DNA of 64,000 bases, taken from positions 9,613,548-9,677,547 of the forward strand of contig JAHRHZ010000085.1 of the NCBI GenBank assembly GCA_024137785.1, in the 5' to 3' direction. Positions within the stretch are counted from its first letter, which is position 1, and each line of letters begins with the position of its first letter. Under the pieces are notes generated by a model that saw only the letters and a program-made list of their open reading frames with translations, ran no database searches and was not told where the DNA came from. Positions 2,327 to 46,859 of the stretch are shown here, one piece after another. Source of the stretch: Ginglymostoma cirratum. Taxonomy: Eukaryota. A program made the translations under genes and the position numbers.

Positions 2327-2369
2327 ATGAATTTTCGCTGTCTGATTCTACTTGAAGTTATTCTTACAG
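2327..2369 (+). CDS. A1 exon 1, signal peptide MNFRCLILLEVILT
   Basis: ATG at 2327, hydrophobic core, phase-1 donor CAG|GTACTT; conserved at 53259-53313. Confidence 0.8.
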
Positions 2370-5300
2370 GTACTTGCTTACTTAATTGACAGAACTGCTT
2401 TAGTTAATAAAAAGCTTCCGAAGCCATTCGTCATTCATTTAAAGAATCTTATTTCCTCTATCTGGTGAATTATTTAACTCTTCTATCTGTATGCTGTATA
2501 TGACAGTTACCTGTGCTGTACTACGTTTCTAATAGCTGCAGACTGCTCTTGGATCAGTGTTACTCAAACGCCTAAAGAAGTAACTGTGAACAGACGGACG
2601 GACATTACTTTCCACTGCAAATTCACCATCTCTCCGCACAGTTCAAAGCCAGAAGTAATTTGGTGGAAACAGATTGGAAATGAACGTTTTCAGACGAGTG
2701 GAAGAAAACGATTTGGCTTTGGAAATGAAACGTCAGCTTTCTGTAACATTCTTAGCGTTACTGTGCAGGATTCTGGAGTTTATTACTGTGCAGTGATTTA
2801 TCAAGGAATAGGTCAAATAAATGGAACCGGATCCCATTTATTTGTACACGGTAAGTGAGAGAGTGACAATGTCGGAAATATTTCGAAGTAACAAGATATT
2901 TTGGATTGCTTATTTCAACACCTTTGGCAGTATTATCATTGTCATTGGTCATTTGCGCGGCAGCCCACATTTAATATTTCTGTTCTCTTGGAAGAACTGC
3001 ATTTGGACAATGAATATCACAGGCAGAAAACTGCAACATTTATAAATATTAGCCATTTATAATTCCAAAGACAACGTATACACGAATTGTGTATTTCCGA
3101 TACATCGAATTTCGAATGCACACACCCGACGAAAAAGCTCTATGTCAACGCTGTTCCACCACGATTCTTCGTTCGTGGTGTGTTCTTGTTGTCTCGACAA
3201 CTCCCATTTACTAGTTCTGAGGCTCAAGAGTCCAGAAATTAACTCTCACACAATTTTCGCGTCATGGTTTGAAAATCAGTGTGAAATCATTTCCTGATGA
3301 ACGGGATTAATGCAAAAGTAGATACATTTTGAAGCATTCCACGCAGTAGAATCACGTACCTTCAATAAACACGTAAACCAATACTGAGAATCTGTAGCTC
3401 CCAAGGCTAAACTGATTTCATATATTTCTTCATTGGCAATGCTTTCATTTTGAAATTTGGCTAATGCTGTGATCTTCATTTGCAGAACAATCAGCAGCTT
3501 TCAGCGTCATTACACACTTCAGCTTAAAAACACAAGGACTTACGAACATTATTTTCTTTGTCCTTTCCTCTGCCCTGGCTCAATTTAATTAATTCATTCA
3601 ATTACGCGAGCCAAGCATTGCTGAGCATTTTGTTGCTTTCTTCTGCTGTGGAAAATCAAATATTGGATTTAATAGTTCAAGTAAAGGTGAATAAATGCCA
3701 CAGGCATGAAAGCTATTTATTTCATTAGCTGGAAGCTTGTACAAAAATTAAACATACAAGATGCTGCGCGTTTGAATGCTGCGATTATGATAAAGCAGAA
3801 CAACTGAAAATCGTACGAATATTTAACATTTTCAGGTTTTGTCCAATAACTTGGCTTTGTTCATTCTCTTCATGCAGTTGCCCCAGTCCCATTGAAAATT
3901 ACGTCCAAGTTCGACGAAGAAAATTCACTTGTATCTTTGACCCTTCTCTGTGAAACGTCTCCATTTTATCCGGAAGATTTCACCCTCGGCTGGTATAAAA
4001 ATGGCACCGAAATCACAGTCGGAATAAATACTAGTAATGTGCAGAACAGTAACGGGCTGTATGAAGTGACCAGTTCTTTGTCTGAGTCTCAACCTCCCTC
4101 ATACAATACCTGGTATACCTGTTCGGTATCCCACGTCTCCCTCAAGAATCCTGCTGTCATCGTCCACACTATTTCCACATTTGCTCGAGTCCAAAAAGGT
4201 GAGTTAGCTATTGTTAAGCAAGTAACGAAATGTATCGTACAATGTGTGCATATCATGGAGCTAATCCGATGGACTTTTGTGGGAAATGTCTCATTTTAAT
4301 GCATTGTATCAAGTCGTCATTTGTGTTGCAAAAGCAGCTAAACCTAATTGGCATTCGATTTCCTTTATTTATGAAAAGGTAATCATATTCAGAACTGAGC
4401 TGCTCAAACCATTTCTTTCTTTCCGTCATTTTGCGCCGTTCACCTTCTTTGCTTCAGTGTCAAAAAAAATGTTCCATCTGTTTCAACTGCCAGGGGCAAC
4501 AGTGTTTTAGGTTTCATTCTGCCGCTTACCACCGCGTTCCCCGGTTGTTGTATCCAGCGCTGATTTTTAAGACTTTACCCTTTGCGAAGTGTAACCTCTC
4601 ACCCATACACAGCACGTTCAATGAGGATCGCGCTCACACATATCGCAAAGTTTGTGCGATGACTTTACTTGTCCTTGGTGTGGCAGATTTAATGCATTAA
4701 TAGTGTTCTCACTTTGTCAGGGCAGAAAACAACAATTTATTACAACTAATCCGTAGATGTCCTTTGTTATGCAATGAATATCATTAAAACAGTTCATTTA
4801 TTTGCAAAGGGTTCATAACCGATTGCCCCAAACCAGAATTCGATGCGGCCAGCAGAGAAAACGTTTGTGAAATTATGCCTGTAATTTCAGGAAAACATAT
4901 TTTAACATGTAAGAAAAGTCAAGAAGAACAGTATTTTGGTCCATCGGGAATCGATCAGTCTTGTATTCCTACCTCTCCAAAACAGTCCTTTATGATCACG
5001 AGCAGACAATCCATTCCGATGGTTTATTCTGAACTTGCCGTCTGTTCGGAAAAATAAGTCACTTCGACATTCAACTGATGTAGCATTTGGCTCTTCAGCG
5101 TTTTCATTGCCCTTCAGTAGTGTAGAACATATGAAAACATCATCATACTTTATGCAGTAAACTACAGCTAGACTTATTCTTATCCAACTGTTTACCAGCA
5201 AATCATGTCCTCTTAATTCTGCAGGCAATACCAACAATTCACTCGCTTTCTGGGCTCCCATTTGTGCGGTGGTTGGATTCGCATTTCTGGTACTAATGGC

Positions 5301-6857
5301 CGTAATTGCAATGCGACGTGGATTTCAGTCTAACAAAAGTAAGATATACTGTATACTCTTGATTTTCGGTCTAGCTGCACTCTGGGGACAGCAAGCGAGA
5401 AAAAGAGTGATTAGCATGTTCGGGAGAAAGTGAAACGATTTAAAGTCGAAAACGCAAGTGATTAATTTTTCAGTGTGCGCAGATTGTTCCAAACCCATTT
5501 TATAAAGCAAAAATGCTCACAGTTTTGTGATCAGAATTTTAATATTTCTCAGGGGCGTTAGTTAGCAACAGAAAGTTTCACGTTTCAATGCAACTAATGA
5601 CATGTACCATGACAAACATGAAGTTGGTAATTTGATTCTTCTGGTGAGCACTGATTGTTCCTTGAAGAACGGGGGGATGAAAAACAGATGTTGACCATGC
5701 GATACTCTTGATGTTTCTATTAGAAAGTAATCACCATTGTTATGCATCAACTGCATATTCTCAGCGCTTTTCTATCGTTTTGACTGAAAAACTTAAAGCT
5801 TCATTTTTCGTATCGAAACTGGGTTAAAATAATTCCACCACTCAATGTAATTATATTCCATTGGTATGTAGATAAAGAAGGATGCACAAGGCAACCGGAT
5901 CGTCGAGACAAGGTGGTAAGTGCACGTCTCCATCACGATAGGGGTTTGCAGTGTCCGGGGCGATGACAATGAAGGAAGAAATATGCTAATCACGTTAGAA
6001 CATTTTAAGTTTATTTATTGAAGGGCGTGCTCACCCAAGGAGATTTGAAATGCAGTTGCTGCTATGTTGCTATTGATAAAGTATGTTAACGGGATTTTTA
6101 AAAACTTGGTTATATCTAAGAGAATGTTTCTAGTTAATAACACTTTAGAAATGCAGTCAATCTTTAGCTTTGGAAATAAATTTACCGTCCAATGCTTTTT
6201 GACATTGAAACAGATGTTGAAGAATGAATGTGAAAAAGCTTAGCTTGTTAATTTGACTAGTTGTGCATTAACATTTGAATTCACGCGAACATACCTGAAA
6301 AATGGATTTGCAAGTGATCTCGGGCTTAAGTCACATTTGTTCACAGCTTGGTGAACGAATTGTTGAAGACAAGAAATAGCGACTAAATGAAATATTTTGC
6401 TTCTGATCCTCGCAGAAAGCCGCGGCTCAGGGTGTGCATTACGATGCGGTAGAATTCAGCAGAGACAAGAAAGCTCCAAGACGTACATTTGAAGTGGAGA
6501 CATGCATGTACGCTGAGGTAGGGCTGAGAAACAGGAGAAGAACTTAGAATTTCATGATGAAATCGCGATTCAGGCTGCCAATGAGATAATTTGTCTCTGT
6601 TGATATTGACGATCTGAAATATTGAAAGTTGTTTGCGTGCCGTTCTGGTGACCACCTTGCAGAAATCTGGGAAAAAGAGACATTTAAATTTTTTCAAAAT
6701 GCTGCCTTTACAGGTCCGTCAAGATGCTGTCGCTAATGAGGTGCCCTACTGTGCGGTAACGTTGACTAGTTCAAAGAAACCGGAGAAGTACCACAGACCC
6801 AAAGAAGGCACAGAGTATGCTAAGCTGCAGACTGGAAGACGAGAAGAAGTAAGATAA
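2327..6857 (+). CDS. Gene A1: intact 7-exon IgSF receptor, leader-V(J)-C1-TM-ITIM/ITSM tail (SIRP-like / NKp30-like V), 360 aa. Exons 2327-2369, 2536-2850, 3878-4198, 5225-5338, 5872-5915, 6416-6517, 6714-6857
   Basis: All six introns are GT..AG with compatible phases (1,1,1,1,0,0). Exons sum to 1083 nt with no internal stop. Each exon has a homologous exon in the paralog at 53-58 kb. Confidence 0.88.
2536..2850 (+). CDS. A1 exon 2, V-set Ig domain with germline-joined J-like G strand
   Basis: VTQTP..ITFHC..VIWWKQ..DSGVYYCAV..GIGQINGTGSHLFVH; acceptor TAG at 2533-2535 (in-frame alternative CAG 6 nt downstream), donor G|GTAAGT at 2851. Confidence 0.95.
3878..4198 (+). CDS. A1 exon 3, C1-set Ig domain
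   Basis: LTLLCETSPFYPEDFTLGWYKNG..GLYEVTSSL..YTCSVSHVSL contains the C1 signatures FYP and YxCxVxH; CAG acceptor, G|GTGAGT donor. Confidence 0.95.
5225..5338 (+). CDS. A1 exon 4, transmembrane segment (uncharged, one Cys)
   Basis: GNTNNSLAFWAPICAVVGFAFLVLMAVIAM followed by RR stop-transfer; CAG acceptor, A|GTAAGA donor; phase 1-1. Confidence 0.88.
5872..5915 (+). CDS. A1 exon 5, short cytoplasmic exon NKEGCTRQPDRRDKV
   Basis: TAG acceptor, GTAAGT donor, 44 nt; same length and splice sites at 57209-57252. Confidence 0.78.
6416..6517 (+). CDS. A1 exon 6, cytoplasmic, ITIM VHYDAV and CMYAE(V)
   Basis: CAG acceptor, GAG|GTAGGG donor, 34 open codons KAAAQGVHYDAVEFSRDKKAPRRTFEVETCMYAE. Confidence 0.82.
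6714..6857 (+). CDS. A1 exon 7, cytoplasmic, ITIM VPYCAV and ITSM-like TEYAKL, stop TAA
   Basis: TTTACAG acceptor; matches the C-terminal part of ORF 6633..6857. Confidence 0.85.
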   Translation, partial: VRQDAVANEVPYCAVTLTSSKKPEKYHRPKEGTEYAKLQTGRREEVR

Positions 6858-13371: not shown

Positions 13372-16300
13372 TGTTATAAAGTGAAGGTTGACGTCCTCCG
13401 AAAACCCAAAAGAGAAGCACCTCTGTTAAAATCTGGTGTAACCTGCCTTTCAACAACTTCTAGTGTCTAAGTAAAATTAATCCCTGATACTCACTTTACA
13501 ATCAACAAGTAACAATTTATTTATCTAACGTTAACATTGAACTAATTAACCACATTATTAGCAAACCAAATAAACCCCTTCTAACAACTAACTATTCCTG
13601 AATAAAACAAAATTCTACTAGTATGCTGCTCCAGGAAGTACAAGGCCTAGTTAAAAAAAAGCATAGAATTTAGTCTGTTGAAATTACAGCCAGATTACAC
13701 ATCTTCTGGAATCTTTTGTGCCTTCGCCATTGATTCTTCTGTCAGGAATCTTAACTAGTAGTGTGTAGGTAGATTAGTTCTTTAGACGGTACTTTCTCTA
13801 AGATGTAGAGAAGAGTGTGAGAGTTAGCAATTCTCCCTTTTGAGCTGAGTTGTTAACTCTGGCAGATGCCTGTTTGTTCTCCTGTCTTTGTCCAACTGCG
13901 CTCTTCCTTTATATCATCTACCAGTTTTCTTACACTAGGATCAGTCCTATGTTGTCAAAACTATCAGCTTTAAATTTAATTGGTTTTAGGATCTAAGTGC
14001 CTGGTTCAAATTGATTGGCTAAATTCAGAACTTGCTGTCCTGGTATAAGCAGTTGCCGGGCCTGCTAATTACATGGCCATTTGATACAAATGTTTCAGTT
14101 TGGTTGCTCTTTCCACAAGTATTCTATTGAACTTCGCAACACCTCCCCCTTAATAAAAAAAAGAAAAGATGACTTCATCTTTTTTTAAAAACCTTAACCC
14201 CACCATTTTGTTAACCTAGAGTTAAATTTTTTATACAAATTCAACACATATACAACATTGAAAACTACCATTTCTTTCTGTATAACATTTTACTTTTTAA
14301 AACCCACAGTAAAGCATCTGTGATAATATTTTCACAATCTGTGACATGTTCTTTTATTGAACAAACCCATCAACAGTGCCACTATGCAACCAAAGTTTGG
14401 AACAAACATCCTGTAGAATCTGCTCAACCACAAAAATCATAGCACTTGCTTCTTCGATGGTGGTATTGGAAATTCCTCAATGGCCTTTGTCTTCATATTC
14501 CTTGGTGTCATCCGAAGTTGTGTCCTAAGAATGTCACTTCCACCTTCACAATGTTGTTTTGCCAAGATTATGACCAACTTTGCCTTCAGTCGTGTCTCAA
14601 AGAGCTCTGCCAAATTCTCCATGTGATCTTTCCACGAATGACTACAGGCCACTAAGTCATGCATGTAAAGAGCACAATTAATCAATCCTGCTACAACTCT
14701 GTTCCAAGTCTTTGAAAAGTGGCTGGTACGTTTTTGGCTCCAAAAGGCATTACTTTAAATTGATATAGCCCATTTGTGTTTACAAAATCAGAAGCTTCTT
14801 TTGCTCACTCCAACCAATGTACTTGCCAGTGACTGCAAAGTAAGTCCAACTTTGTGATGTAACTGGATTGTCCTACATTTTCCTCACAGTCCTCCATCCT
14901 TGGAATTGGATGTGAGTCAGACTTGGGCACAGTATTGACCTTCCAATAATCAGTGCAGAATTGTTGAGTCCCATCAGGCTTGGGAACCAAGATGTTTGGC
15001 GAGCTCCACTCGCTTTTACTTGCCTGTATGTTATCTTCTTGGGGCATCACTTCTACTTCTTTCTGACCCTGCTCTGGTTTGAGAGGATTAAGACTGTAGG
15101 GGTGAGATAGCAAGAACTGCAGATGCTGGAGTCAGAGATAGCAAAGTGCAGAGCTGAAGGAACAAAGCAGGCCAGGGAGCATCAGACAAACAGGAAAGTG
15201 GGAGTTTTGGGTCAGGACTCTTCTTCAGAAAGAAAGACTACAGGTGTGTTATTTTATTGGAACAGCAGTCCCTGATTCAGACTCAAATACTGTGGCATTA
15301 GTCTCCTAAATCTATTTCCGCATTAGACTTCAAAGCACTGCAACAAGACTTTCAATTTAGCTCTCTGTTTCTGGGACAGATAGGTCACTACCCTATCCCA
15401 TTCCTTAAGGACTTCCTCAGTATTCAATAATTTTTGAGGCACCTCAAAATCCACATAATCTGGATTTGACTCCTCTCTCTGTGTGGCAGTAACTAACACC
15501 CATTTCTCTGGTTCCCCTTCCCACTCATAGTAAGGTTGCAGCATGTTCACATGGCATACCCAATAATTTTTTTCCTATCTGGCATCTTTACCAGATAATT
15601 TGCCTGGTGTAACTTCTTCCCAATCTGATAGGGATGACTAAACTTGGCTTTAAGGGGATTTTATACCATTGGTAACAGCACTGATACTTTACCCATGGAC
15701 AAATGTATGCATTTTAGATTTCTTACCTGCTTCTTGCTTCATCTTGCGCTGTACCACTTTCAAATGTTGTTTAGCTAATTCACCTACGCTGTTCAATTTT
15801 TCTCTCACCTCAGATTCATAATCCAACTGTGACATCTCTGACCTTGGACCTATCAACATTTCCTTAATTAATATTAAAGGCCCTTTTATTTCGTGTCCAA
15901 ATATCAATTCAAATAAAGTAAACTGAGTTGATTCATTTGGAGCATCGCTAATAGCAAATAATATAAATGGGATACCTTTGTCCAAATCATTTGGCTAATC
16001 CTTGTAATAAGCCCTCACCATTGTGTTTAGGGTCTGATGCCACTTTCCCAATGCTGTCTGGAATTCAGTATGGTACACACTTGGTTTAAAATGTTGGATG
16101 CCCAAGATCTCTACGACACCCTTATATAATTTGGCAGTAAAATTGAACTCTTGGTCTGACTGAATCTCCCTGGGTAGGAAACAACGGGTAGGGAAAGCAA
16201 TCAACTCCTCCACGACCTTGTTTGCCTCGAAATTGCGTAATGGAATTGCATCTGGAAATCTGAAAGAAACATCCATTGTGTTTAGGAAATACTGGCTCCC

Positions 16301-18915
16301 ACTTTTGATTTTAGGCAGGGAACCTACACAATCGAATATAACGCACATAAACATTATTCAACTGTGAGAATTGACATCGAAGGCGCTAGTTTTATTACTG
16401 TCTCTGGCTTTCCTGCCATTTTACATTTATTGCAGTAATGACAAAATTCAACCACTTCTTTATGTAATCCAGGCCAATAGAAATGCTTCTGTGTATTAAC
16501 CAGAGTCTTCCTCACTCCTAGATGACCTCCAACAGGTAATTTTTGTGCTACCCACAATACTTACCGTTTGTATTCCAGCGTCAAAACAATCGGGTGAACA
16601 TCTGCCCATTTATTGTCGTGCTAACCTATCAAGTTCTCCATTTCCACTTTAATATTTTGTCCTTACGTTAATAGTGTTCTGGGATACATTCTGATTCCTT
16701 TTCCGAGTAGGCTTCATGGTATAAATCCTTTATCGTCCAATCCTTCTGTTGTAATTCCATTAGTCTTTCAGAATTAAACACTTCTTTCTGATCCTCCACT
16801 TGCTTAGTTTTTCTTTTACCATCTCATCAAACAGAGAGTCAACTAAGTAGCCCTGAAGACCTTTATCTTTCTCCATTGCTTTCCCTTCTTGTTTTAAATT
16901 ATAGAAGTGGGATCTTGTCAACACAGACTGGAAAATTTCCAGTGCGTTTTCTTTTAACTGCTTAGTTCCCTGGTTTTCTTTCTGTTTCTCCACTACAACG
17001 GGCATCACTCTCTAATGTGATCCAGCTATATCGGTTCAAACAACAAACTGTATTCATGGAATAGCCAATTTTTCTATCATTTCCACTATCATTTCCCCAG
17101 TCATGATTGGACTTTCTAGCCTTATAATAAACAGGGAAAATCTCAGGTGATATTTCAGAAGGAGTGGAACAATTTTTGTCTCTTGCTATTAGTGATTGAC
17201 TGGGTATCTCTCAATATCGTAATTTTTTTTACCTACTCATTCTGTTCTAACTGAGTAAACCATACCCACATATGTGAAGTCTTTGAAAAGATCAAGAGCA
17301 GTCCTACTATCCAGCCTGTGACTAGGCTGTGCACTCTCCTGGACCTTCTCAACTTTTCTTGGGATTTCTTTCACTACATCACAGAATCCCACTAGTTCAG
17401 CCTATTTTACTGTATTGTTTTTCCCAACGCCTTTGTTAACCAACCAGCATTGTGACTTCGTGTGTCCCACTTTATTGCAGTGAAAACATCTGAGGTCTTT
17501 CACCTCATTTCCACCTTCTTGGTTTCTTTTTACACATGTGGTAAAGTGTTCCCAGCATGATCCAATGTTGTCTTTCATTGAAGGATCTCCGTTCTTCCCA
17601 ATTCTTATCTCTAATGTAATGACATAGCTATCAGAAGCTAGATTTCAATTTATGCACTAATGCTTATTCATCCACCATCTCTGCAGCTCTTCTGGTTGCT
17701 AAAGTTGTTGTTCCACAACATGAGGTCTTATTACATCTGAAATCGAGTTTTTAAACTTCTCCAGCAGAAGAATCCTTTAAGAGCCTTGTACGTCTTTTCT
17801 ATCTTTAATGCTCTCATCCATCTGTGGATGTTGTTCTGTTTAATTCTTTCAAACTCAATATAAGTCTGACTTCGTTCCTTTCTTATATTTCTGAATCATT
17901 GTATATATGCTTTGGTACCAATTCATAGGCAGTCAAACAGCCTTTTTGCCTTCATCATATTCTCCTGACACCTCCTCTCGCAGTGCTGCAAACACCTCAC
18001 TATACCTACCTACCGACTTGGTCTGAATTAACATTACCAACATAGTCCCTGGCCAGTTCATCTGTTTACCGTATTTCTCAATGGCAATCAAAAAGTCTTC
18101 TATATTTTTCATTGAGTTTTGGTAATACTTTGATACATTTGTATAGATTCCTACCAGGCCTTTGGCTACGATGGCTTTGCTCATCATCACTATCAACCTC
18201 ACTAAGCCTACATTCTGCCTTCATCTCCATCCTTTTGAATTGATTTTCCTGTCTAATTCTCAACTTTTGAAGTTCAAATTTTCTTGATTTTTCTGTTTCT
18301 TCTCTACCCTTTTCTTTTTGTTCTGCCACAGCGATTCTTTCATTTCCTTTTTCGTCATGAAGCTGCTTCATCTTTTCCTACTCAAACTTTTTTCCCTTTC
18401 TTTCTCTTCTAACCCCAGTTGCCTAATTTGCAAGGTTTTTTCTAACTCCACTGCACTTGATTGTATTTTTGATATAACTAAGTGTTTGGCTATCCATGTT
18501 ACAATTTCATCTTTCTTCTTATGCCTAGATGAACCCAATTCTAACAGGTCTGCTAATTGCTAAAGTATCCCCTTCTTCTGTCTTTCTAAACTTTCCAACC
18601 GCCCTCCCCTTTTATACCCTCGATGACCTATCAGTTTCTTACTTTAGGGTTGGATCTATGTTGTCAAACCATCAGATTTAAGTTTAATTGTTTTTTGGAA
18701 ACTAGGAGCTTGGTTCAAATTGATTGTTTAAATTTGAAATTTTTGTGCTTGTAAATCTGCTGCTTGGCATGCCATCTGTACGGCCAGTTATTGCAAAAGT
18801 TTCCAGTCAGGTTCTCTCTGTGTATTTTCAAACTCTCAAGCTCACAGACCTCCTTTTTAAAACTCTAAGCATAGGAAAAGCACATCATCTTTTAAAGGGA
18901 ACACTCAAATTCTAA
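13372..18915 (-). mobile_element. Decayed Ty3/Gypsy LTR retrotransposon with integrase upstream of RT (Gmr1-like)
   Basis: gag with CCHC knuckle CFHCNKVGHTKSQC (~17446-17492); integrase GGHLGVRKT..FYWPGL..C..C, DCVG, EIQSDQ (15689-16557); RT WSSP..VPKPDG..DYWKVN..LDL (14437-15113). 3' LTR 13372-14141 has TGTT..AACA ends and a polypurine tract at 14142-14150; 5' LTR remnant at ~18600-18915. Confidence 0.88.
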
Positions 18916-20499: not shown

Positions 20500-23369
20500 T
20501 TTCTGAAGTATATTGCGTGCTCCAGATACAAACTATTCTATATTTTCAGACATTATTACACACATTTGAAGCAGGTGAGACATGAAGATGGGCAGGGTCG
20601 ATACTACTGCATCACAAGGCCCTTACATGATTTAGCTAATACTTTAAATAAGTGAATCGCCAAAAGGATAATCACAATTTATTTGGCGCACCGTTATTTA
20701 CCACTTCACAAAAGGAAGTTCTCTCAACTTACAATGTGCGGCAGCATCATGTTCTTCCCTTTCAGTACCACCTTGCTTTTGTTACTCAATTCCAACTTTG
20801 TTTTTTTCTGCTCAGAATCCATCATCTCTCAATAAAACTCAAATAGTGCTCCATCAAAGTCACAGGTTCCAGTGAGCAGATCTATGACAGTGGCTGCTAT
20901 TCTTTTTTTGCCTTTTTCTCAAGGTCTCTGTAGCCCCGGCATTTCAATCTAGCAAACATGCTCCAAAGCTTCTCCTCTGTTATCCTTTATCATCTAGTTA
21001 CATTCATCTGTCAGACCTTGAACGGAATGCATTGAGAAACAACATTTCTGAGAAAAGTTTCTTCATCCAGAGATTGCGACCCTGTGGAATTGTCTGTCAA
21101 AGAAATAAGTTGAATGTTTTACCCGTTCTGCGTGCTTGGTGAAGATGCCAGGGTCGGTACAGCGATTGATTTCCGTCACTCCATGGCGTTATAAGTATGA
21201 TCATATTGTGCAAAGGCCAGGAAATTTTGGTGCAGATTTACGAAACGCTGCACAGACTTAACTCAGACTTCACTGAGTATTGAGCACATGTTTGGCTCGG
21301 CAAATCAGGAACAGTTTGAACGCACTTTGAAATAGAATTGAAACAAGTTGTAAGAATGATAGAAAAGTGTTTTGTAGGACGGTTGTTACTATAAAATCGT
21401 GTCACGCAGTGGATTATCTTACAAGTGCATTCATTGTTGTGCGAGAAACGCGGCAACCAACATGCCCTGCTATTAGCTAAAAGTAGCATTCTATTAAACA
21501 AAAAAAGTGTTTTTACTTTGATTGACAGATAAATATTGCCAATAACGCCAATAATTCCACTGCTGTTCTTGGATGTAGCTCCAAGGAAGTTTAGTAGAGC
21601 AACTCTGGCTACTTCCATTTAAATGAGAAAGTTAAAAGGAGATTGGATCCACCTGTTCAAGCCATGAGAGTTCTGAAGGAAGTGGATAATCATCATGGTC
21701 CGCTGATCACATGAATAGTAGTCCCCAGAACTGGAGCCTCTGAATATGTCAAAAGAAACAAAGGTCACATGACCAACAATTGCGGTGAACATATGGATGT
21801 TCAACACTGTACCGTGTTGTTGAAAGGCAACAAGAAAGCTGAAATGCCAAATATTAATATTGGAAGGCGAAGTGACTTCTTTAGCAGCAGATGTCACATT
21901 CTGAATTAATCTGTCGAATGGATTGTCGGTTCATGGACCGAAAATAAATGTTTTTGAAAGGTAGACAGAGCAATTCCCCACGGAAAAAAAAAGTTTTTCT
22001 TGACTTTTCTTACACATTAGCATACACTTTCTTAAAATTAGAGACATGATTTCACACGCACTTTCTCTGCTCATCGCTTCAAGTTACGAACTGAGGCAAT
22101 TCGTTGTGTACCCAATGCAATTAAATGAGTTGTGTATATCACATTTATTGTATAACGAAGGCCATCTGTGAGCAAGGTATCGTAAATTATTAACTTGTGC
22201 CGTGACAGTCTATTAACAAAGTAAGCAATTTGTTAATGAATTAAATCTGACGCAACAGGGGCAAGTCAGATCATCACAAAAACTTTATGATACGTGTGAA
22301 CGTGATCCCAACTGAACGTGCCGTGGGAAGAGAGAGATAACACCTGACACGGGATAAAGCTTAGAATTCTGCCCTCGACGCAACCACCGGGAAATGTCGT
22401 GGTTGAAGACTGAGCGGTACCAAACAAAGCAAGGCAGATCCTGGCAATAGTACAGGGAAAGTAGGCACTAGCAAGGAATTAAACATTTTTAACACAGCAG
22501 CAAAAACAGTGAATAAAAAAAGGATGACGGAAAGAAAGAAATTGATACAACAGCTCACTTCTGGACACAATAACTTACCACTACTAAAGGAACTTGAATG
22601 CCAATAAGGTTTAGCCTCCATTGCAACACAAATATCAATTAAATATAATGCATTAAAATGTGATATTTCACTCGAAGTTACCGCAGCTTAGCGCACACTG
22701 CACGACGTATCCGTTACGTACTAAACAGTAGTTAACTCGTCTTTCTGGACTCCACAAAATGTGGGAATAGTGCAGGGGACGACAGCGGAAGTACCTGAGG
22801 GAGACGTGAGATACAGAACAGATCCACCTGGTAATGCTTGAGGGAGGTTGAGATTCAACAAAGAGCTGGAAGCTTCATTTAGCCCTGTACTGTTCTGCAC
22901 TTTACTAGTATTTATTTCGACTGTTGTTTCGGCGAGAGTGAAATTCTCCAGATAAAATGGAGCCGGTTCACACAGTAAGTTCAAAAATGCAGGTGAATTT
23001 TCTTCGTGTAACTTGGACGTGATTTTCAGTTGGACAGCGGCAGGTGCACGAAGAGAATGAACAAAGCCAAGCTATCGGATATAATTGGAAAACGTTATAT
23101 TTGAGTACGATGTTCAGTCGCTCCACTTGATCATAATCGTAACATTCGGGGGGACAGCTTCTGGTCTGATATAATGTATAAGGTGCTGATTGTTGACTAA
23201 ATAAAGGTGGCTGTATCAGTTAAATTTCAAAACCAATGAATTGCTAATGAGGAAATAGATTAATCAGTTGAACATCGGGAGCTATAGATTATCTGTATTC
23301 TTTAATATACTTATTGGACATCAACGATTCTACAGCGTGGTATAAATCAAACTGCATTTTTTGGTTGGG

Positions 23370-24031
23370 GATAAAAGGTACTGCAGATGCTGGAGAATCC
23401 GAGATAACAAGCATGGGGCTGGATGAACACAGCAGGTCAAGCAGCATCATAGGAGCAGGAAAACTTGACGTTTCGGGCCTAAACCCTTCATCAGAACCCT
23501 TTCTGATGAAGGGTTTAGGCCCGAAACGTCAANNNNNNNNNNNNNNNNNNNNNNNNNNNNNNNNNNNNNNNNNNNNNNNNNNNNNNNNNNNNNNNNNNNN
23601 NNNNNNNNNNNNNNNNNNNNNNNNNNNNNNNNNNNNNNNNNNNNNNNNNNNNNNNNNNNNNNNNNNNNNNNNNNNNNNNNNNNNNNNNNNNNNNNNNNNN
23701 NNNNNNNNNNNNNNNNNNNNNNNNNNNNNNNNNNNNNNNNNNNNNNNNNNNNNNNNNNNNNNNNNNNNNNNNNNNNNNNNNNNNNNNNNNNNNNNNNNNN
23801 NNNNNNNNNNNNNNNNNNNNNNNNNNNNNNNNNNNNNNNNNNNNNNNNNNNNNNNNNNNNNNNNNNNNNNNNNNNNNNNNNNNNNNNNNNNNNNNNNNNN
23901 NNNNNNNNNNNNNNNNNNNNNNNNNNNNNNNNCCCTTTCTGATGAAGGGTTTAGGCCCGAAACGTCAAGTTTTCCTGCTCCTATGACGCTGCTTGACCTG
24001 CTGTGTTCATCCAGCCCCATGCTTGTTATCT
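23370..24031. mobile_element. Inverted pair/array of Penelope terminal repeats with hammerhead motifs (23467-23494 -, 23503-23530 +, 23939-23966 +), flanking an N gap
   Basis: Same ~130-nt repeat as 37340-37432, in both orientations. Confidence 0.8.
23533..23932. other. Assembly gap (400 N)
   Basis: Run of n. Confidence 1.
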
Positions 24032-31109: not shown

Positions 31110-33454
31110 ATGTGGTTCAACTGCTCATTGCTGTTTTCTTATTGGTCGATTGTTGCCTGCACTGCAGGTGAGGAACTATGGAAGTTGGTGTGGTGATCAC
31201 AGCTACTTAGGTTCAGATTGTACTCCTGAGGTGCGAACCTACAGTCTAGCTGTGGCCACCTCCAATTCAGGAAATATTCAGGACCATCCAGTTGGGGCAG
31301 AATGTAACTGTGCCTAATTTTATGGTGGCACTGGACGCAAAATGTAGTCTGGGGCTAAAGGAGGAAAACTGAAGAGTTTAATGCTTGACGTTTCATGGAT
31401 ACGTGGTATTTCATGCTTTACTCAGTCTTGCTGGAGTCGCAAAACGATTTAAGGCTAATAATTTATTAGGACATGTGTCATTCACAAAGCTAGGGAGAGG
31501 AAAATGCTGATCCAACGACGGAATAGTTCTGATAATAACAGATACCATGTTAAGTGCAGTATCACATCATTAATCTCGGTCTTGAAACACAGCTGAACAA
31601 ATGAAGGAGATGGGAAGGAGATCTCGTCAGAAAAGGCAAAGGAACAGATATTTTGATGTGAAAAGGAAGAGAATGATGAAGAGAAGCAGAAGCCAAGTTT
31701 AGCTTACATTTCCCCCCACAAACTTATAAGGAACGGAAAGCCTTGATACAATGATGCAATTATGGGCCATTAAATGGTTTTACAATAAATGGCATGTATA
31801 TTCTAGAGATCCATCAAATTTTTGAGAAGTCCCTTTAAGCGTTCTGAGAGATTCTCCATTACATCCATTTTCTGTATTTGTTTCGCGACTGATTTGTATC
31901 CCCTTAGTTATCCCATAACAGCCAGTGACCCCACAATTTCCACTCTTTTTGCCTTGTTCACATTGCTTGCATCTCATATAGTTCTGCTTCCTTATCAATG
32001 TAACATAGACAGCCTTTTCAGTGCCTCGTTGTTAACAATTTTAAATACCTTAAACGCACGAAATATTTACCCTTTCGCCATGAGCAGGCAGCACTCGGCT
32101 CATGCGAAGCGTCTCAATTTCTAAATGTGCTTTTTGGACCCTAATCGGCCACAATCCATTTCTCATCAGCTCCTTAGTCCGTAAATGCCAGGATAAGCTT
32201 TTTGGAATGCCTTTTCACCTCTCAAACTCTCTCTTTTAGCTTCTTCAATCTACCTTCAAAATTCCCATTCGATTCTATATTGACCTGGTTCTTAGTTCAG
32301 TTATCCACCTGACTTCAGTTGCACGTATAGGTTTCCTACTTCATCTTATTTTATTGCTTGGTCTGGCTGTTGAACGAAAAGTGTGAGCCAAGGATGAACA
32401 GCAACATCTTATTGTCTCGCGTTCTGAACTTCTCTGCATTGTTTGACATGGTCAACCAAACGGTTATTCGTCAAAGCTTCTGTGTTGCTCCCCAAACTGG
32501 CTGCGCTGATTTAACGTATCAGGAATCTAAACCGAACTCGTAAGTGTTGAGAAATTTGACATTTGAAATGTCATATATTTCTCTTTATGTTGACAACACG
32601 TGTCGTTCAACGGTGGAGGCAATGCAAAGATTAGATTCTTAGGCCTATGAAATGAAGCCTATTTGCAGAAACCCCAATTACAGGAAAACAAAGGTCACAG
32701 CCTCAGAAGTGATGGAAATCTAACCGGAAGTTATCCTTCAACTTTACAGTCTCGCAGTTAATGTTGACCGGTATCAATTAAATTCATTGTTCAGAACGAA
32801 AAGCGAGTATGGTTTTCCGAGGTAATAGGAACTGCAGATGCTGGAGAATCTGACATAACAAGGTGTAGAGCTGGATGAACACAGCAGGCCAAACAGCGTC
32901 AGAGGAGCAGGAAGGCTGACGTTTCGGGCCTAGACCCTTCTTCAGAAATTTTCCGATGGGTTTTCCGATGCTTGATTCTCAGGGATATTATTTAAACAGT
33001 AACTACCTCTTTGATCATCACCAGGGCTATCTCAACTAATTGTACATTTATTTAACTATATATAATGTCACAATGTAACATCGTTTCCCCCTCTTCGATT
33101 TGCATGTTACTTCCAGTACAATTAAGTTCTCTATGACCCTGTTTTCTGGCAGCCGAAGAGCACGTTTATTTTTCAGAGTTGCTCAAAAGCCTCAAGAAGC
33201 TTTTGTGTCATGAAAGAAGAATATCTCTTTGATCTGCTTCTTTTCTGCATCTGGGGTGAATTCCTCGATAAAAGTGCATTGGTGGAAACAGGTGAGAATT
33301 AATTCCTACTCCCTTGCACGGATAGCAGAAAGCAATTTGATGTCAGCCATAACGGGAGCACTTTCCTGTGCTTGGTGCAGGTGAATGTTAAAAACTGTGA
33401 CTTCACTACTGCACGGTATTCTGACAAGGATCGGATCACACTGACGTGCATATG
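31110..33454 (+). pseudogene. Divergent family member: leader exon 31110-31167 (MWFNCSLLFSYWSIVACTA) and decayed V exon ~33153-33454
   Basis: Phase-1 donor CAG|GTGAGG. V remnant reads VAQKPQEAFVS*KKNISLICFFSASGVNSSIKVHWWKQ..SRKQF..HYCTVF with stops and frameshifts; not in the ORF track. Confidence 0.7.
32822..32948 (-). mobile_element. Penelope-terminus-like short repeat with hammerhead motif (32918-32945)
   Basis: Reverse complement reads CTGAAGAAGGGTCTAGGCCCGAAACGTC followed by the family tail. Confidence 0.7.
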
Positions 33455-35777
33455 CTAAGTAAAAAAACACCTGAAAGTGGAACAGTTAAAAATATCAAAC
33501 TTGTAGCAATTGAGACGCTTGGCACGAGACGAGAGCTGCCCTGCTCATGGCTAAGTTGTAAATATTTCGTGCGTTTAAGGTATCTGTTGTTTTGTTGTTT
33601 AAGGTGTTGCGTTGTTTTGTCATTCGAATGCTGGAGAATCTCAGCAGATCTGGTCGCATGTAGTGATAGAAATAGGGTTAATGGAGCACTGACGAAAAGT
33701 CATACCGGACTCAAACGGTTGATTCTATTTCTTTCCGCAGATGCCGCCAGTATTATTGAGTCCCTCCTGCGTTATCTGTGTTTATTTCAGATTTCCAGCA
33801 CTCACAGTACTTTGTTTTTCTTTTGTGATTGTTATGATGCACCTTTTCAGTTAGTTTAAGCATGATTACCAGCACATTTTCGGATGAATTATACTCTCAT
33901 CTTGCTTGGTGTAACCGCAGACAACCTCGCCACGCTCAGAGTATTACAAAACAAGTGAATTTTAATCAGATTGATCAGAACTCCAAACATAATGTACTTA
34001 TTTTGTACATTATGTGTTATGCGCCAGAGTGAGGAAGTTCTGCAGAAATTACAAATATGTAGCCCCTGACTGAAAGTCAGATATAATAACAGGCCTCTCC
34101 CAGCACATAGACAGGTTTTAGTCCATTGTTATGCTGGATGTAACCCCATCACTATCATAATATAAAACAAAGAACTGTGAATGCTGGAACATGAAGCAAA
34201 AACAGGCATTACTGTAGAAACTCAACAGGTCCGGCAGTATCGGTGTAGACAAAACCGAATTAATGTTTCGAGTCTCGTGATACTTGTGCCGAATTGATAG
34301 TAGCCAGGAAAATGCAATTGTCGCCGCCGCTGCTGAAACCACCGCCTCCATCACCGAAACCAACACCGTCATCGCGGTTGCCGCCGCCGACGCCGCTCCG
34401 CCCACCGCCCACCGCCTACGTCGCTCCGCCCACCGCCGAAGCCGACACAACACCCACCGCTGACGTAACTCCGCACACAGCCGACGCCGCCAACGCTCCG
34501 CCCACAACCTCCACAGCCAGCAGCTCCAGAGGAGACAGCAACACTGAGCCCTGCCGGGACTTCACCAACCCCCCAGACCTCCACCTCACTGAGGACGAAC
34601 GGTCAGTCCTCAGTAAAGGGCTCACCTTTGTCCCCCTCCACACACATATCAACGAATACCGCTCACGCTTGGATATTGAGCAGTTTTTCCGCCGCCTCCG
34701 CCTCCACGCTTACTTCTCTAACCGCGAATCTAACCCTCCCTCTACTGACCCCTTCTCCCGCCTCCAACACAAGCCCTCCTCCTGGACACCACCCCAAGGC
34801 CTCCTACCCTCCCTCGACCTCTTCATTTCCAACTGCCGTCGAGACATCAATCGCCTTAACCCCTCTACCCCTCTCACCAACTTCAACCTCTCCCCTGCAG
34901 AACGTGCAGCCCTCCGCTCCCTCCGCTCCAATCCCAACCTCACCACAAAACCCGCGGACAAGGGAGGCGCAGTCATAGTATGGCGTACTGACCTCTACAT
35001 TGCTGAGGCCAGGCGCCAACTCTCTGACATCTCCTCCGACCGCCCCCTGGATCATGACCCCACCCCCGAGCACCAAACCATCATCCACAACCTCATCACC
35101 TCAGGTGACCTCCCACCCACCGCCTCCAACCTCATCGTTCCCCAACCCCGCACCGCCCGCTTCTATCTCCTCCCCAAAATCCACAAACCTGAATGCCCTG
35201 GTCGACCCATTGTCTCCGCCTGCTCCTGCCCCACCGAACTCATCTCCACCTACCTAGACTCCATTTTCACCCCCTTGGTCCAGGAACTCCCTACCTACGT
35301 CCGTGACACCACCCACACCCTCTACCTCCTCCAGAAATTCCAATTCCCAGGTCCCCAACACCTCATTTTTACAATGGACGTCCAGTCCCTATATACCTGT
35401 ATTCCCCATGCTGATGGCCTAAAGGCCCTCCGCTTCTTCCTGTCCCGCAGAACGGACCAATCCCCCTCCACCGACACCCTCATCCGCCTAGCCGAACTCG
35501 TCCTCACCCTCAACAACTTTTCTTTCAATTCCTCCCACTTCCTACAAACAAAGGGTGTGGCCATGGGTACCCGCATGGGTCCAAGCTATGCCTGCCTCTT
35601 TGTAGGTTATGTGGAACAATCCCTCTTCCGTACCTACACTGGCCCTAAACCCCACCTCTTCCTCCGTTACATTGATGACTGCATCGGCGCCGCCTCGTGC
35701 TCCCACGAGGAGCTCGAACAGTTCATCCAATTCACCAACACCTTCCACCCCAACCTGAAGTTCACCTGGACCATCTC

Positions 35778-35877
35778 NNNNNNNNNNNNNNNNNNNNNNN
35801 NNNNNNNNNNNNNNNNNNNNNNNNNNNNNNNNNNNNNNNNNNNNNNNNNNNNNNNNNNNNNNNNNNNNNNNNNNNNN
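35778..35877. other. Assembly gap (100 N) with ~200 nt duplicated on either side
   Basis: 35575-35777 is repeated at 35878-36080 with a few substitutions. Confidence 0.95.
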
Positions 35878-37340
35878 ATGGGCCCAAGCTATGCCTGCCT
35901 CTTTGTAGGTTATGTGGAACAATCCCTCTTCCGCACCTACACTGGCCCTAAACCCCACCTCTTCCTCCGTTACATTGATGACTGCATCGGCACCGCCTCG
36001 TGCTCCCACAAGGAGCTCGAACAGTTCATTCAATTCACCAACACTTTCCACCCCAACTTGAAGTTCACCTGGACCATCTCCAACACTTCTCTCTCCTTCC
36101 TGGACCTCTCTGTCTCCATCTCGGGCAACCACCTAGAGACAGATGTCCATTTCAAGCCCACTGACTCCCACAGCTACCTGGAATACACCTCCTCCCACCC
36201 ACCCTCCTGCAAAAATGCCATCCCCTATTCCCAATTCCTTCGCCTCCGCCGCATCTGCTCCCAGGATGAGACATTCCAATCCCGCACATCTCAAATGTCC
36301 TCATTCTTCAAGGACCGCAACTTAACCCCCACAGTGGTTGAGAACGCCCTCGACCGTGTGTCCCGCATTTCCCGGAACACATCCCTCATGCCCCGTCCCC
36401 GCAACAATAACCAAAAAAGAATCCCCCTCGTCCTCACATACCACCCCACCAACCTACGGATCCAACGCATCATCCTCCGACACTTCCGCCATCTGCAGTC
36501 AGACCCCACCACCAAAGACATCTTTCCCTCCCCACCCTTATCTGCCTTCCGGAGGGACCACTCCCTCCTCGACTCCCTTGTCCGCTCCACACTCCCCTCC
36601 AGCCCCACCACACCCGGCACTTGTCCTTGTAACCGCAGGAAGTGCTACACCTGCCCCCACACCTCCTCCCTCACCCCAATCCCAGGCCCCAAGAAGACTT
36701 TCCACATCAGGCAGAGGTTCACCTGCACATCTGCCAATGTGGTATACTGCATCCGCTGTACCCGTTGTGGCCTCCTCCACATCGGGGAAACCAAGCGGAG
36801 GCTTGGGGATCGCTTTGCAGAACACCTGCGCTCAGTTCGCAACAAACAACTGCACCTCCCAGTCGCGAACCATTTCAACTCCCCCTCCCATTCCTCAGAT
36901 GACATGTCCATCCTTGGCCTCCTACAATGCCACAGTGATGCCACCTGAAGGCTGCAGGAACAGCAAATCATATTCAACCTGGGAACCCTGCAGCCCAATG
37001 GCATCAATGTGGATTTCACAAGCTTCAAAATCTCCCCTCCCCCAACCGCATCCCAAAACCAGCCCAGCTCATCTCCACCTCCCTAACCTGTTTTTCCTCT
37101 CACCCCAAGCCACACCCCCATCTCCTATCTACTAACATCATCCCGCCCCCTTGACCTGTCCATCCTCCCTGGACTGACCTATCTCCTCCCTACCCCCCTA
37201 CCTACACTCACCTTTACTGGCTCCATCCCCGCCTCTTCGACTTGTCTGCCTCCTCTCCACCTATCCTCTCCTCTATCCATCCTCTATCCGCCTCCCCCCT
37301 CTCCCTATTTATTTCAGAACCCTCTTCCCCTCCCCCATTT

Positions 37341-37368
37341 CTGATGAAGGGTTTAGGCCCGAAACGTC
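37341..37368 (+). ncRNA. Minimal type I hammerhead ribozyme motif in the Penelope terminal repeat
   Basis: CTGATGA-A-GGG-TTTAGG-CCC-GAAAC-GTC: conserved core boxes, 3-bp stem II, GUC cleavage triplet. Confidence 0.7.
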
Positions 37369-37759
37369 AAGTTTTCCTGCTCCTATGATGCTGCTTGACC
37401 TGCTGTGTTCATCCAGCCCCATGCTTGTTATCAAGGATAAACCCTACTGTGAAATTAGCCCTCAAGTATTACTCCGGGGAAGACCAACTGCCGAACAAAC
37501 CCTCGCTAGGGGTTGGGTGAAGGGAATAAAGGAACTGTGTAGACTGGCCAGCTGTGTATTCCTAGGTAATCCGTTTCGATGTCAGTGCGGTACTGAATTC
37601 ACACAGCGTGACTCGTGTGGTTTCTTTTAACTGTTTACAAGTTGTAGTTCGGAATATTTTGATATTTGGATATTTTTGATATTTGGTATTTTTTGGTACT
37701 TTTGAGAATACAAGAGTGAATTGTTTAAGGTAAAGTGTCCTGTGTACCTTCAAAAATTC

Positions 37760-38265
37760 ATTCCACTGAGGTTAATTCTTGTCTCAGGCAGAAACAGGCA
37801 ACAAACCTGATTCAACGATATTGGCCAGGGAACACAATTGTGTGTTGAAGTGGCAGGCAACAGGAAGCTCCGGATTATTTTTGGCGACTGACGTAGGTGT
37901 TCTGCAAAGCGGTCCCCAAGTCTGTGCTTCGTCACTCCCATGTAGATTATGAGCACCAGCATCCATTTCCAAATGAATGCAAGCAGCCATTTCCGCCACC
38001 TCCAGCAAGATGAAACGACCAAACCTCCCTTGTCAGACTTCCACTTGGATAGCTCCCTGCAGGAAATTTTGATCCACTCTTCCTCCACTCCAAATGACAC
38101 CGTACACCCAAAGACGCCTTCCCATGGAATCACGGAAAGAGTAACATATGCCTGTTTGCTTCCCCACTCCTCGCTACCCAAGAGCCACGGCGCAACTTCC
38201 AAGTCAAGCAATGATTTTCCTGCACTTTACTCAATCTAGTCTATTGTACTCGCTGCTCGCCATGT
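37760..38265. mobile_element. Old Penelope-like fragments, inverted pair
   Basis: YMGVTKHRLGDRFAEHLR on the minus strand; HFRHLQQDETTK on the plus strand. Confidence 0.65.
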
Positions 38266-46625: not shown

Positions 46626-46859
46626 GACTCTTACAGCTTTTGACCTGGTGTATAAAGGGAAGAATGCTTGCGGGAAATGACTAATAGTTGATGATTTAAA
46701 GTATTGACAAGAAATTTGGTTCAATTTAAATGCTTGCCTTCATGTTCCAGGAAGGATATCAGTGAACAATCATCCTGAATATTAATAGCCGTAACGTTTA
46801 GGCTGTACGTATATATGAATTAAACTAGGGCTGGCTGTTCTTTTTGAACTGTTAGCTTC

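What the first reader, a model, noticed from the sequence alone, without database searches (positions are those of the whole stretch)
2327..6857. A1 combines an NKp30-like germline VJ domain, one C1 domain and a SIRPa-like four-tyrosine tail
Seen: the single V exon ends YYCAVIYQGIGQINGTGSHLFVH, so the J-like GxG strand is encoded in the V exon without rearrangement. It is followed by one C1 exon, and the tail order is VHYDAV, CMYAEV (split across an exon junction), VPYCAV, TEYAKL. Established: NKp30 has a germline VJ domain ending in a similar ..GLGVGTGNGTRLVV; SIRPa is V-C1-C1 with alternating ITIM/ITSM-like motifs; TCR and IgL chains are VJ-C1. Inference: A1 resembles the hypothesised pre-RAG VJ-C1 receptor, wired as an inhibitory receptor.
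Basis: partly seen in the sequence, partly recalled or inferred. Interest (0 to 1): 0.8.

Follow-up and report, generated by a model that had tools for sequence, protein, structure and literature searches.

The report
Shark SIRP-like V-C1 inhibitory receptor gene
This is a real, intact and transcribed shark gene for a small cell-surface receptor with one variable-type and one constant-type antibody domain and an inhibitory tail. It is one more member of a large family of sharks, rays and chimaeras that databases already label "SIRP-alpha-like", so it is sound but not unprecedented.

Summary
At 2327-6857 (+) seven GT..AG-bounded exons read in one frame, giving 360 codons. The exons are a leader, one V exon that carries its own J-like strand (...YYC...NGTGSHLFVH), one C1-set exon, an uncharged TM, and three tail exons. 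The tail exons carry VHYDAV, CMYAE|V, VPYCAV and TEYAKL. RNA contigs and polyA reads show four of the six splices. One of these is C1 spliced directly to TM, so there is no second C1. They also move the exon-5 donor to 5916. Leader>V and V>C1 were not seen in RNA.

- A1 is not a one-off hybrid. It belongs to a multigene family found across Chondrichthyes, and RefSeq already models it under inconsistent automatic names, mostly "SIRP-alpha-like".
- A zebra-shark model (XP_059507523.1) has the same layout.
- The V domain is not specifically NKp30-like. Its best structural matches are VNAR, CD79b and TCR V; NKp30 ranks 50th.
- The tail matches SIRP-alpha unit for unit, and a family profile aligns collinearly with SIRP-alpha.
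- In a V tree the family stands apart from SIRP d1, so it is SIRP-like but not a plain SIRP orthologue.
- Nothing shows it is an antigen-receptor ancestor.

This scan had already found the same family several times 6.7-7.5 Mb upstream on the same piece. Synteny could not be tested.

The parts
2327..2369 (+). Exon 1: start codon and most of the signal peptide (phase 1 at its end)
   Evidence: Translation. The same leader, and the ILT|AAD junction, are present in bamboo-shark P0002 and zebra-shark P0152. The splice to exon 2 was not seen in RNA.
2536..2850 (+). Exon 2: V-set domain with a germline J-like G strand (NGTGSHLFV), and no RSS or separate J
   Evidence: Pfam V-set E 6.4e-11. The AF2 model has pLDDT 88.6. 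Foldseek top matches are VNAR, CD79b and TCR V. An alternative in-frame acceptor lies at 2542.
3878..4198 (+). Exon 3: the single C1-set domain (FYP...WYKNG...YTCSVSH)
   Evidence: Pfam C1-set E 1.1e-11. PDB sequence matches are to UrIg2, Ig constant domains and MHC II beta2. RNA joint 4198>5225.
5225..5338 (+). Exon 4: stalk, uncharged transmembrane helix and RR stop-transfer
   Evidence: Translation. RNA joints are seen on both sides.
5872..5915 (+). Exon 5: a 44-nt cytoplasmic exon (NKEGCTRQPDRRDKV). It is skipped in one RNA contig, which shifts the frame and removes all the tyrosine motifs.
   Evidence: Joints 5338>5872 and 5915>6416 in X2 and X6; joint 5338>6416 in X1. The frame after skipping can be read (frame 0 of exon 6).
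6416..6517 (+). Exon 6: first tail unit, with VHYDAV (ITIM) and CMYAE
   Evidence: Translation. RNA joint 6517>6714. It aligns to the SIRP-alpha tail unit at 2.1 bits, against a shuffle maximum of 0.1.
6714..6857 (+). Exon 7: a Val that completes CMYAEV, then the second tail unit with VPYCAV (ITIM) and TEYAKL, then the stop codon
   Evidence: Translation. The SIRP-alpha profile scores it 10.6 bits against a shuffle maximum of 1.6, covering a whole ITIM-spacer-EYAxxQ unit with one gap.

Best explanation
A1 is a functional gene of a multigene family found across Chondrichthyes. Its members are type I membrane receptors built as signal peptide, germline VJ-type V domain, one C1-set domain, uncharged TM and a cytoplasmic tail of repeated ITIM-spacer-(T/S)xYAxxQ units.

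Shown here: the exons, their frame, four of the six splices, transcription, family membership, and the likeness of the tail to SIRP-alpha.

Inferred:
- The V domain binds an unknown ligand.
- Src-family kinases phosphorylate the tail tyrosines.
- The paired phosphotyrosines, 23 residues apart in each unit, recruit tandem-SH2 phosphatases (SHP-1/SHP-2) and dampen activation, as in SIRP-alpha.
- Skipping of the 44-nt exon 5 gives a frame-shifted form without ITIMs, which may act as a non-signalling variant.

The family is SIRP-like in design. Whether it is the cartilaginous-fish counterpart of SIRP or a separate old V-C1 lineage is not settled.
For: - Exon model and frame.
- Domains.
- Spliced RNA in three runs, one of them polyA RNA.
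- The big protein search with the V exon gave 222 hits. The single-domain, full-length ones are V-C1-TM-ITIM proteins. All that were looked up come from sharks, batoids and Callorhinchus.
- Zebra-shark XP_059507523.1 (P0152) is collinear exon for exon: 61% identity in V, 74% in C1, 53-58% in TM and tail.
- The family HMM finds only A1 intact in the window.
- The family HMM scores tetrapod SIRP-alpha at 113-165 bits in two collinear pieces, V+C1 and C1+TM+tail.
- The SIRP-alpha HMM scores the A1 exons at V 20.4, C1 35.2 and exon 7 10.6 bits.
- In the V tree A1 groups with A4, then with the bamboo-shark and zebra-shark proteins, inside one family group (90/92).
Against: - Leader>V and V>C1 junctions were not seen in RNA.
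- One X1 contig has 27 foreign nt before the C1 exon. This may be a paralogue's intron or another upstream exon.
- Expression is low: 15 reads in about 1.9 billion letters of X6.
- Only VHYDAV and VPYCAV fit the strict ITIM consensus.
- CMYAEV has Cys at -2, and the tyrosine is missing at that position in the zebra-shark protein.
- No ligand, phosphorylation or phosphatase binding has been tested.
Confidence: 0.8

Rival explanations
1. A1 and its family are simply the cartilaginous-fish (co-)orthologues of SIRP-alpha, and most copies have lost one C1 domain.
For: - RefSeq names most members PTPNS1/SIRP-alpha-like.
- The family HMM aligns collinearly with SIRP-alpha from d1 to the C-terminus at 113-165 bits, above every PDB chain (maximum 119).
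- The tail units correspond.
- A skate model (P0083, Amblyraja) has V-C1-C1.
- In the big search, the nearest bony-vertebrate V domains that were looked up and carry a family name are SIRP-beta-like proteins of sturgeon and lungfish.
Against: - In the V tree the family (90/92) lies apart from the SIRP d1 clade (95/91*). That clade groups instead with other shark multi-V proteins (95/84*).
- Two word searches with family queries found no bony-vertebrate member.
- SIRP-alpha is not among the top Foldseek or VIA matches.
- ITIM plus TxYxx tails also occur in unrelated Ig receptors, so tail likeness can be convergent.
- Synteny was not tested.
Confidence: 0.3
2. The family is a relic of the non-rearranging VJ-C1 antigen-receptor precursor, nearer to UrIg/UrIg2, TCR and IgL than to SIRP.
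For: - It has VJ-in-one-exon plus C1 architecture.
- The C1 exon's top PDB sequence hit is UrIg2.
- The V model's best matches are VNAR and TCR V.
- The ectodomain model of the orthologue matches Ig light chains and TCR chains.
Against: - The UrIg2 score is a sum over three domains (24, 12 and 26 bits). Single MHC II beta2 domains score 43-44 bits.
- Structural scores are tied across many V-C proteins, with Z 14-17.
- The tail and the collinear profile point to SIRP.
- No linkage to the MHC or to the antigen-receptor complex is shown.
- The published candidates UrIg and UrIg2 have three or more C domains (PMC12227049).
Confidence: 0.1
3. A1 is an NKp30 (NCR3) relative that has gained a C1 exon and an inhibitory tail.
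For: - It has a J-like strand with an NGT sequon.
- NKp30 (3noi_B) appears among the Foldseek matches at E 5e-8, TM 0.74.
Against: - NKp30 ranks 50th, behind VNAR, CD79b and TCR V.
- NKp30 is absent from the top 60 PDB sequence hits for both the V exon and the V profile.
- The TM has no charged residue.
Confidence: 0.03
4. A1 is an expressed pseudogene or a decaying copy, like its neighbours in the window.
For: - The other four family pieces in the window are broken.
- Read depth is low, and an exon-skipped frame-shifted transcript exists.
Against: - All seven exons are open, in phase and flanked by canonical splice sites.
- The canonical Cys, Trp, YxC and YxCxVxH residues are kept.
- Correctly spliced transcripts are found in two or three independent runs.
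Confidence: 0.05

Closest known systems
Chondrichthyan RefSeq models named 'tyrosine-protein phosphatase non-receptor type substrate 1-like' and similar. The closest is Stegostoma tigrinum XP_059507523.1, named 'HLA class II DRB1 beta chain-like'.
   Same: - The exon-by-exon layout and domain order are the same.
- Both have the NGTGS..L.V J-like motif and the C1 motifs.
- Both have an uncharged TM, the 15-residue exon-5 peptide and the tail units.
   Different: - Identity is 61% in V and 74% in C1.
- The zebra-shark protein lacks the second tyrosine (it has NMNNE where A1 has CMYAE).
- No paper that I could search describes this family, and its database names contradict one another.
SIRP-alpha (SHPS-1/PTPNS1) of tetrapods
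   Same: - It has a VJ-type V domain in one exon, C1-set domains and an uncharged TM.
- Its tail has two units of ITIM, a spacer of about 23-24 residues, then xEYAxxQ.
- The profile alignment is collinear.
   Different: - SIRP-alpha has two C1 domains and A1 has one (RNA joint).
- A1's V lies outside the SIRP d1 clade.
- A1 lacks the YYCVKF hallmark seen in the SIRP sequences fetched.
- CD47 binding is untested.
UrIg and UrIg2 (non-rearranging shark VJ-C genes; PMC12227049, PMC10751288)
   Same: - The V and its J-like strand are in one exon, followed by a C1-set domain.
- The leader is split.
- They occur in cartilaginous fish.
   Different: - Nurse-shark UrIg2 has nine C domains. The paper describes UrIg as having several C domains too.
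- The recombinant proteins form disulfide-linked homodimers.
- The paper text searched does not mention an ITIM.
- A1 has one C1 and an ITIM tail.
- The C1 similarity is no better than to other C1-set domains.
NKp30 (NCR3)
   Same: It has a germline VJ-type V domain with a GxGT..V strand.
   Different: - NKp30 has no C domain. From general knowledge, it signals through a charged TM residue.
- A1 has a C1 domain, an uncharged TM and ITIMs.
- The structural match is weaker than to VNAR, CD79b and TCR V.

Membership tests
Chondrichthyan V-C1-TM-ITIM family (the RefSeq 'SIRP-alpha-like' models) | V domain with a germline J-like motif NGTGSxLxV in the same exon | tested here: met
   A1 has NGTGSHLFV at the end of the V exon. 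The motif is the family consensus.
Chondrichthyan V-C1-TM-ITIM family (the RefSeq 'SIRP-alpha-like' models) | Single C1-set domain with the motifs PxPL...C(E/K)T..FYP...L.WYKNG...GLYE.SS...YTC.VSH | tested here: met
   Alignment. Pfam C1-set E 1.1e-11. The family HMM scores the C1 exon at 160 bits.
Chondrichthyan V-C1-TM-ITIM family (the RefSeq 'SIRP-alpha-like' models) | Uncharged TM followed by a tail of ITIM-type units | tested here: met
   Translations. The tail exons hit the family HMM at 18-26 bits.
Chondrichthyan V-C1-TM-ITIM family (the RefSeq 'SIRP-alpha-like' models) | V domain groups with the family in a tree | tested here: met
   The family forms one group at 90/92. A1 sits with A4, and its nearest other rows are P0002 and P0152. 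The tree lacks NKp30, UrIg and true Ig V domains.
SIRP (SIRP-alpha/beta/gamma) | Ectodomain of V-C1-C1 | tested here: not met
   The family HMM finds only one C1 exon in the gene, and RNA joins it directly to the TM exon.
SIRP (SIRP-alpha/beta/gamma) | N-terminal V belongs to the SIRP d1 clade | tested here: not met
   The SIRP d1 clade (95/91*) excludes the family. The SIRP-alpha HMM gives the V exon only a generic 20.4 bits.
SIRP (SIRP-alpha/beta/gamma) | Tail of two ITIM-spacer-xEYAxxQ units (SIRP-alpha) | tested here: met
   Exon 7 scores 10.6 bits over a whole unit with one gap. Exon 6 scores 2.1 bits. Both exceed all 200 shuffles. Only two of the four motifs fit the strict ITIM consensus.
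SIRP (SIRP-alpha/beta/gamma) | Conserved synteny with the SIRP locus, and CD47 binding | not testable with these tools
The window holds only family copies and repeats.
NKp30 (NCR3) | Single V domain without a C domain, and a charged TM residue for ITAM adaptors (definition from general knowledge) | tested here: not met
   A C1 exon is present and spliced to TM. The TM stretch LAFWAPICAVVGFAFLVLMAVIAM has no charged residue.
NKp30 (NCR3) | V domain closest to NCR3 V | tested here: inconclusive
   3noi_B ranks 50th by Foldseek (E 5e-8, against 1e-9 for VNAR). No NCR3 sequence was available for a tree.
UrIg / UrIg2 | VJ exon followed by three or more C1-type domains | tested here: not met
   A1 has one C1 only. 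The definition is taken from PMC12227049.
Rearranging antigen receptors (TCR, IgL) | V gene segment ending in an RSS, with separate J segments | tested here: not met
   The V exon reads straight through YYC...GTGSHLFVH to a GT donor.

The most novel reading that the evidence does not exclude
The chondrichthyan V-C1-ITIM family, A1 included, may not be SIRP at all. It could be an independent, very old non-rearranging VJ-C1 lineage. On that reading its V domain is nearer to antigen-receptor V domains (VNAR/TCR-like by structure) than to SIRP d1. It would then be a third relic of the pre-RAG receptor pool beside UrIg and UrIg2, one wired as an inhibitory receptor.
Probability: 0.12. Interest if true: 0.7.

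Novelty: new member of a known kind. Interest (0 to 1): 0.35.

Why it matters
The gene adds a checked, RNA-supported exon model to a receptor family that is widespread in sharks, rays and chimaeras. That family is inconsistently named by annotation pipelines and is apparently undescribed in the searchable literature.

The family bears on two questions:
- How old the SIRP-type inhibitory design is.
- Which non-rearranging V-C1 genes existed beside the ancestors of antibodies and T-cell receptors.

This single copy does not change the picture. Its value is as a well-defined representative for cloning, ligand search and phylogeny.

Tried and rejected
- **NKp30 affinity.** Tested by sequence and by fold. 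It is not the closest match.
- **UrIg2 affinity of the C1 exon.** The top PDB rank is an artefact of summing three domains.
- **Fold searches with the orthologue's ectodomain.** Foldseek and VIA-wide. Scores were saturated by Ig light chains or tied among B7, nectin and butyrophilin V-C proteins, so they cannot decide the family.
- **Word searches with a family member and with the family alignment**. Only chondrichthyan proteins came back.
- **Literature searches** for SIRP or VJ-C1 in cartilaginous fish. They found UrIg/UrIg2 and MHC papers, but none on this family. The UrIg 2023 paper is not held, and the PRARP 2019 paper did not come up in the search, so neither could be read.
- **The 27-nt loose end of an X1 contig.** It was searched for in the window and not found.
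- **Pfam on the large repeat ORFs.** Nothing found.
- **Joined model.** Exons were searched one by one, and the full-length structure was predicted for the stored zebra-shark protein P0152 instead.
Full report
**What is in the sequence**

The window looks like cartilaginous-fish DNA: about 40% GC, SINE-like repeats, and closest proteins from carpet sharks. Region 2327-6857 on the + strand holds seven open, phase-compatible exons flanked by GT..AG.

| Exon | Coordinates | Content |
|---|---|---|
| 1 | 2327-2369 | Leader |
| 2 | 2536-2850 | V domain |
| 3 | 3878-4198 | C1 domain |
| 4 | 5225-5338 | Stalk and TM |
| 5 | 5872-5915 | Short cytoplasmic exon |
| 6 | 6416-6517 | First tail unit |
| 7 | 6714-6857 | Second tail unit and stop |

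- The lengths sum to 1083 nt, that is 360 codons plus the stop.
- The V exon ends ...DSGVYYCAVIYQGIGQINGTGSHLFVH directly before a donor. The J-like G strand is therefore germline-encoded, and there is no RSS.
- Pfam calls the V exon V-set (E 6.4e-11) and the next exon C1-set (E 1.1e-11).
- The C1 exon has the YxCxVxH signature (YTCSVSH).
- The TM stretch has no charged residue and is followed by RR.
A fifth tyrosine (EKYHRP) lies outside any motif.

**RNA evidence**

Contigs of two runs that are probably RNA (X1, X2) and raw reads of a polyA RNA run (X6) of the same species show these GT..AG joints:
- 4198>5225 (X1, X2, and two X6 reads)
- 5338>5872 and 5915>6416 (X2, and one X6 read each)
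- 6517>6714 (X1, X2)

Three things follow.
- There is no second C1 exon between C1 and TM.
- The donor of exon 5 is at 5916. The exon is therefore 44 nt and ends ...DKV, as in the zebra-shark protein.
- CMYAEV is truly assembled across the exon 6/7 junction.

In X1 a contig joins 5338 directly to 6416, skipping exon 5. This shifts the frame (frame 0 of exon 6) to a stop after 25 codons, which gives a tail without any of the motifs.

The leader>V and V>C1 junctions were not seen. The X1 contig that covers C1 carries 27 nt upstream of 3875 that occur nowhere in the window, even with three mismatches. Since those 27 nt run straight into a CAG, they may be the intron end of a paralogue that was assembled onto shared C1 sequence. 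That is unproven.

**Family**

One exhaustive search with the V exon against 1.84 billion representatives gave 222 hits.
- The hits that match the whole V domain once are proteins of about 250-400 residues built V-C1-TM-tail, with the same J-like motif and C1 motifs.
- Look-ups show they come from:
  - sharks: Stegostoma, Chiloscyllium, Scyliorhinus, Mustelus, Heterodontus, Heptranchias; and, from the word search, Rhincodon, Hemiscyllium and Cetorhinus
  - batoids: Amblyraja, Leucoraja, Narcine, Mobula, Hemitrygon, Hypanus
  - the chimaera Callorhinchus
- Their RefSeq names disagree. Most are PTPNS1/SIRP-alpha-like. Others are SIRP-beta-like or SIRP-gamma-like, tapasin-related-like, MHC class II beta-like, TCR beta-like, Ig lambda-like or NCR3LG1-like.
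- The closest full-length protein, zebra-shark XP_059507523.1 (P0152, 363 aa), is collinear with A1 exon for exon, including the 15-residue exon-5 peptide.
- Some RefSeq isoforms lack C1, and one skate model has two C1 copies.
- No paper that I could search describes this family.
- Earlier notes of this scan report the same family several times 6.7-7.5 Mb upstream on the same piece. I treated them as leads, and my own searches agree with them.

**Relation to SIRP**

After fetching real SIRP sequences, I ran profile comparisons in both directions.
- A family HMM scored tetrapod SIRP-alpha at 113-165 bits in two collinear pieces. One is V+C1 on d1-d2; the other is C1+TM+tail on d3 through the C-terminus. 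That is more than any PDB chain scored (maximum 119; SIRP-alpha ectodomain 102).
- A SIRP-alpha HMM scored the A1 exons at V 20.4, C1 35.2 (on d3), exon 7 10.6 and exon 6 2.1 bits. The best of 200 shuffles for each were 2.0, 3.5, 1.6 and 0.1.
- Exon 7 aligns over a complete ITIM-spacer-EYAxxQ unit with a single gap.
- In a maximum-likelihood tree of V domains (58 rows, 108 columns) the family is one group (90/92).
- That group is separate from the bony-vertebrate SIRP d1 clade (95/91*). The SIRP d1 clade instead joins other shark multi-V proteins (95/84*).
- That tree has no NKp30, UrIg or bona fide Ig V domains, and its deep branches are weak.

So the family is SIRP-like in architecture and tail, but A1 is not a plain SIRP orthologue by its V domain.

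**Relation to NKp30, UrIg and the antigen receptors**
- The AF2 model of the V exon (pLDDT 88.6) matches shark VNAR, CD79b and TCR V best (E about 1e-9, TM 0.8). NKp30 (3noi_B) is rank 50.
- Neither the V exon nor a V profile puts NKp30 or SIRP in the top 60 PDB sequence hits.
- The C1 exon's top PDB hit is UrIg2, but only by adding three domains (24, 12 and 26 bits). Single MHC II beta2 domains reach 43-44 bits.
- The model of the orthologue's ectodomain matches Ig light chains and TCR chains by Foldseek. By VIA it ties with many V-C proteins at Z 14-17.

These tests do not single out any antigen-receptor relative. The J-like strand is a general VJ feature; the SIRP d1 sequences fetched here have it too.

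**Surroundings**

A1 is the only intact family gene in the window.
- A4 (about 53464-57850, +) is a roughly 80%-identical tandem duplicate. Its V is 94% identical, its C1 is frame-shifted near 55022, and its TM and tail have diverged.
- Fragments lie at 22785-23035 (-), 33217-33395 (+), 46874-47149 (-) and perhaps 43405-43479 (-).
- The rest is repeats and retroelement-like ORFs.

**Verdict**

The gene is real, intact and transcribed. It most likely encodes an inhibitory receptor that works like SIRP-alpha through ITIM-recruited phosphatases. That mechanism is inferred from the motifs, their spacing and the uncharged TM.

It is a new member of a kind already present in databases, not a unique NKp30/SIRP hybrid. 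Its claim to represent the pre-RAG receptor rests on architecture alone.

The spliced A1 model was never joined for any search or fold.

Noticed in passing
window 5338>6416 (skips exon 5, 5872-5915): An RNA contig of run X1 skips the 44-nt exon 5. This shifts the frame and ends the protein 25 codons later, without any ITIM. Runs X2 and X6 include the exon. It may be a regulated signalling versus non-signalling switch, or it may be splicing noise.
   Followed up: partly
window 3875, upstream loose end of the X1 contig: The X1 contig that covers C1-TM-exon 6-exon 7 carries 27 nt (TAGTCTTATCTTGGTACGTGATGTTCC) before the C1 exon. These are absent from the window. They may be a paralogue's intron end joined in assembly, or an unknown upstream exon.
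   Followed up: partly
window 53464-57850 (+): Paralogue A4 is about 80% identical to A1 in DNA over the 9 kb compared. Its V exon is 94% identical in protein, its C1 exon is frame-shifted near 55022, and its TM and tail have diverged. Its exon 6 keeps a canonical SMYAEV.
   Followed up: partly
window 22785-23035 (-), 33217-33395 (+), 46874-47149 (-), 43405-43479 (-): Broken C1, V and tail-like fragments of the same family are scattered on both strands. One lies next to the N gap at 23533-23932. They are remains of further copies.
   Followed up: partly
window 4199-4296 (read-through of the C1 donor): Reading through the C1 donor gives GELAIVKQVTKCIVQ... and then a stop. Zebra-shark RefSeq isoforms of 247 aa end in the homologous read-through (GELVAVSFVTKCIVE), which suggests a possible soluble form. 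No RNA depth was seen over this stretch in A1.
   Followed up: no
window 34000-38000 and 46000-50000: Two GC-rich blocks (GC about 0.52) have opposite GC skew (-0.4 and +0.4) and long ORFs. One has a YIDD reverse-transcriptase-like motif at 47649-49061 (-). They look like two copies of one retroelement in opposite orientation. Pfam found nothing.
   Followed up: partly
window 14440-18560 (-): A run of ORFs resembles retrotransposon gag/pol pieces. Pfam gave no significant family for the two ORFs tested.
   Followed up: partly
proteins P0036, P0058, P0099 (against P0109): Family members in RefSeq include V-TM-tail forms without the C1 domain. In Heterodontus, P0099 and P0109 look like isoforms of one gene, with and without C1. 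C1 skipping therefore seems to be a recurrent annotated variant.
   Followed up: no
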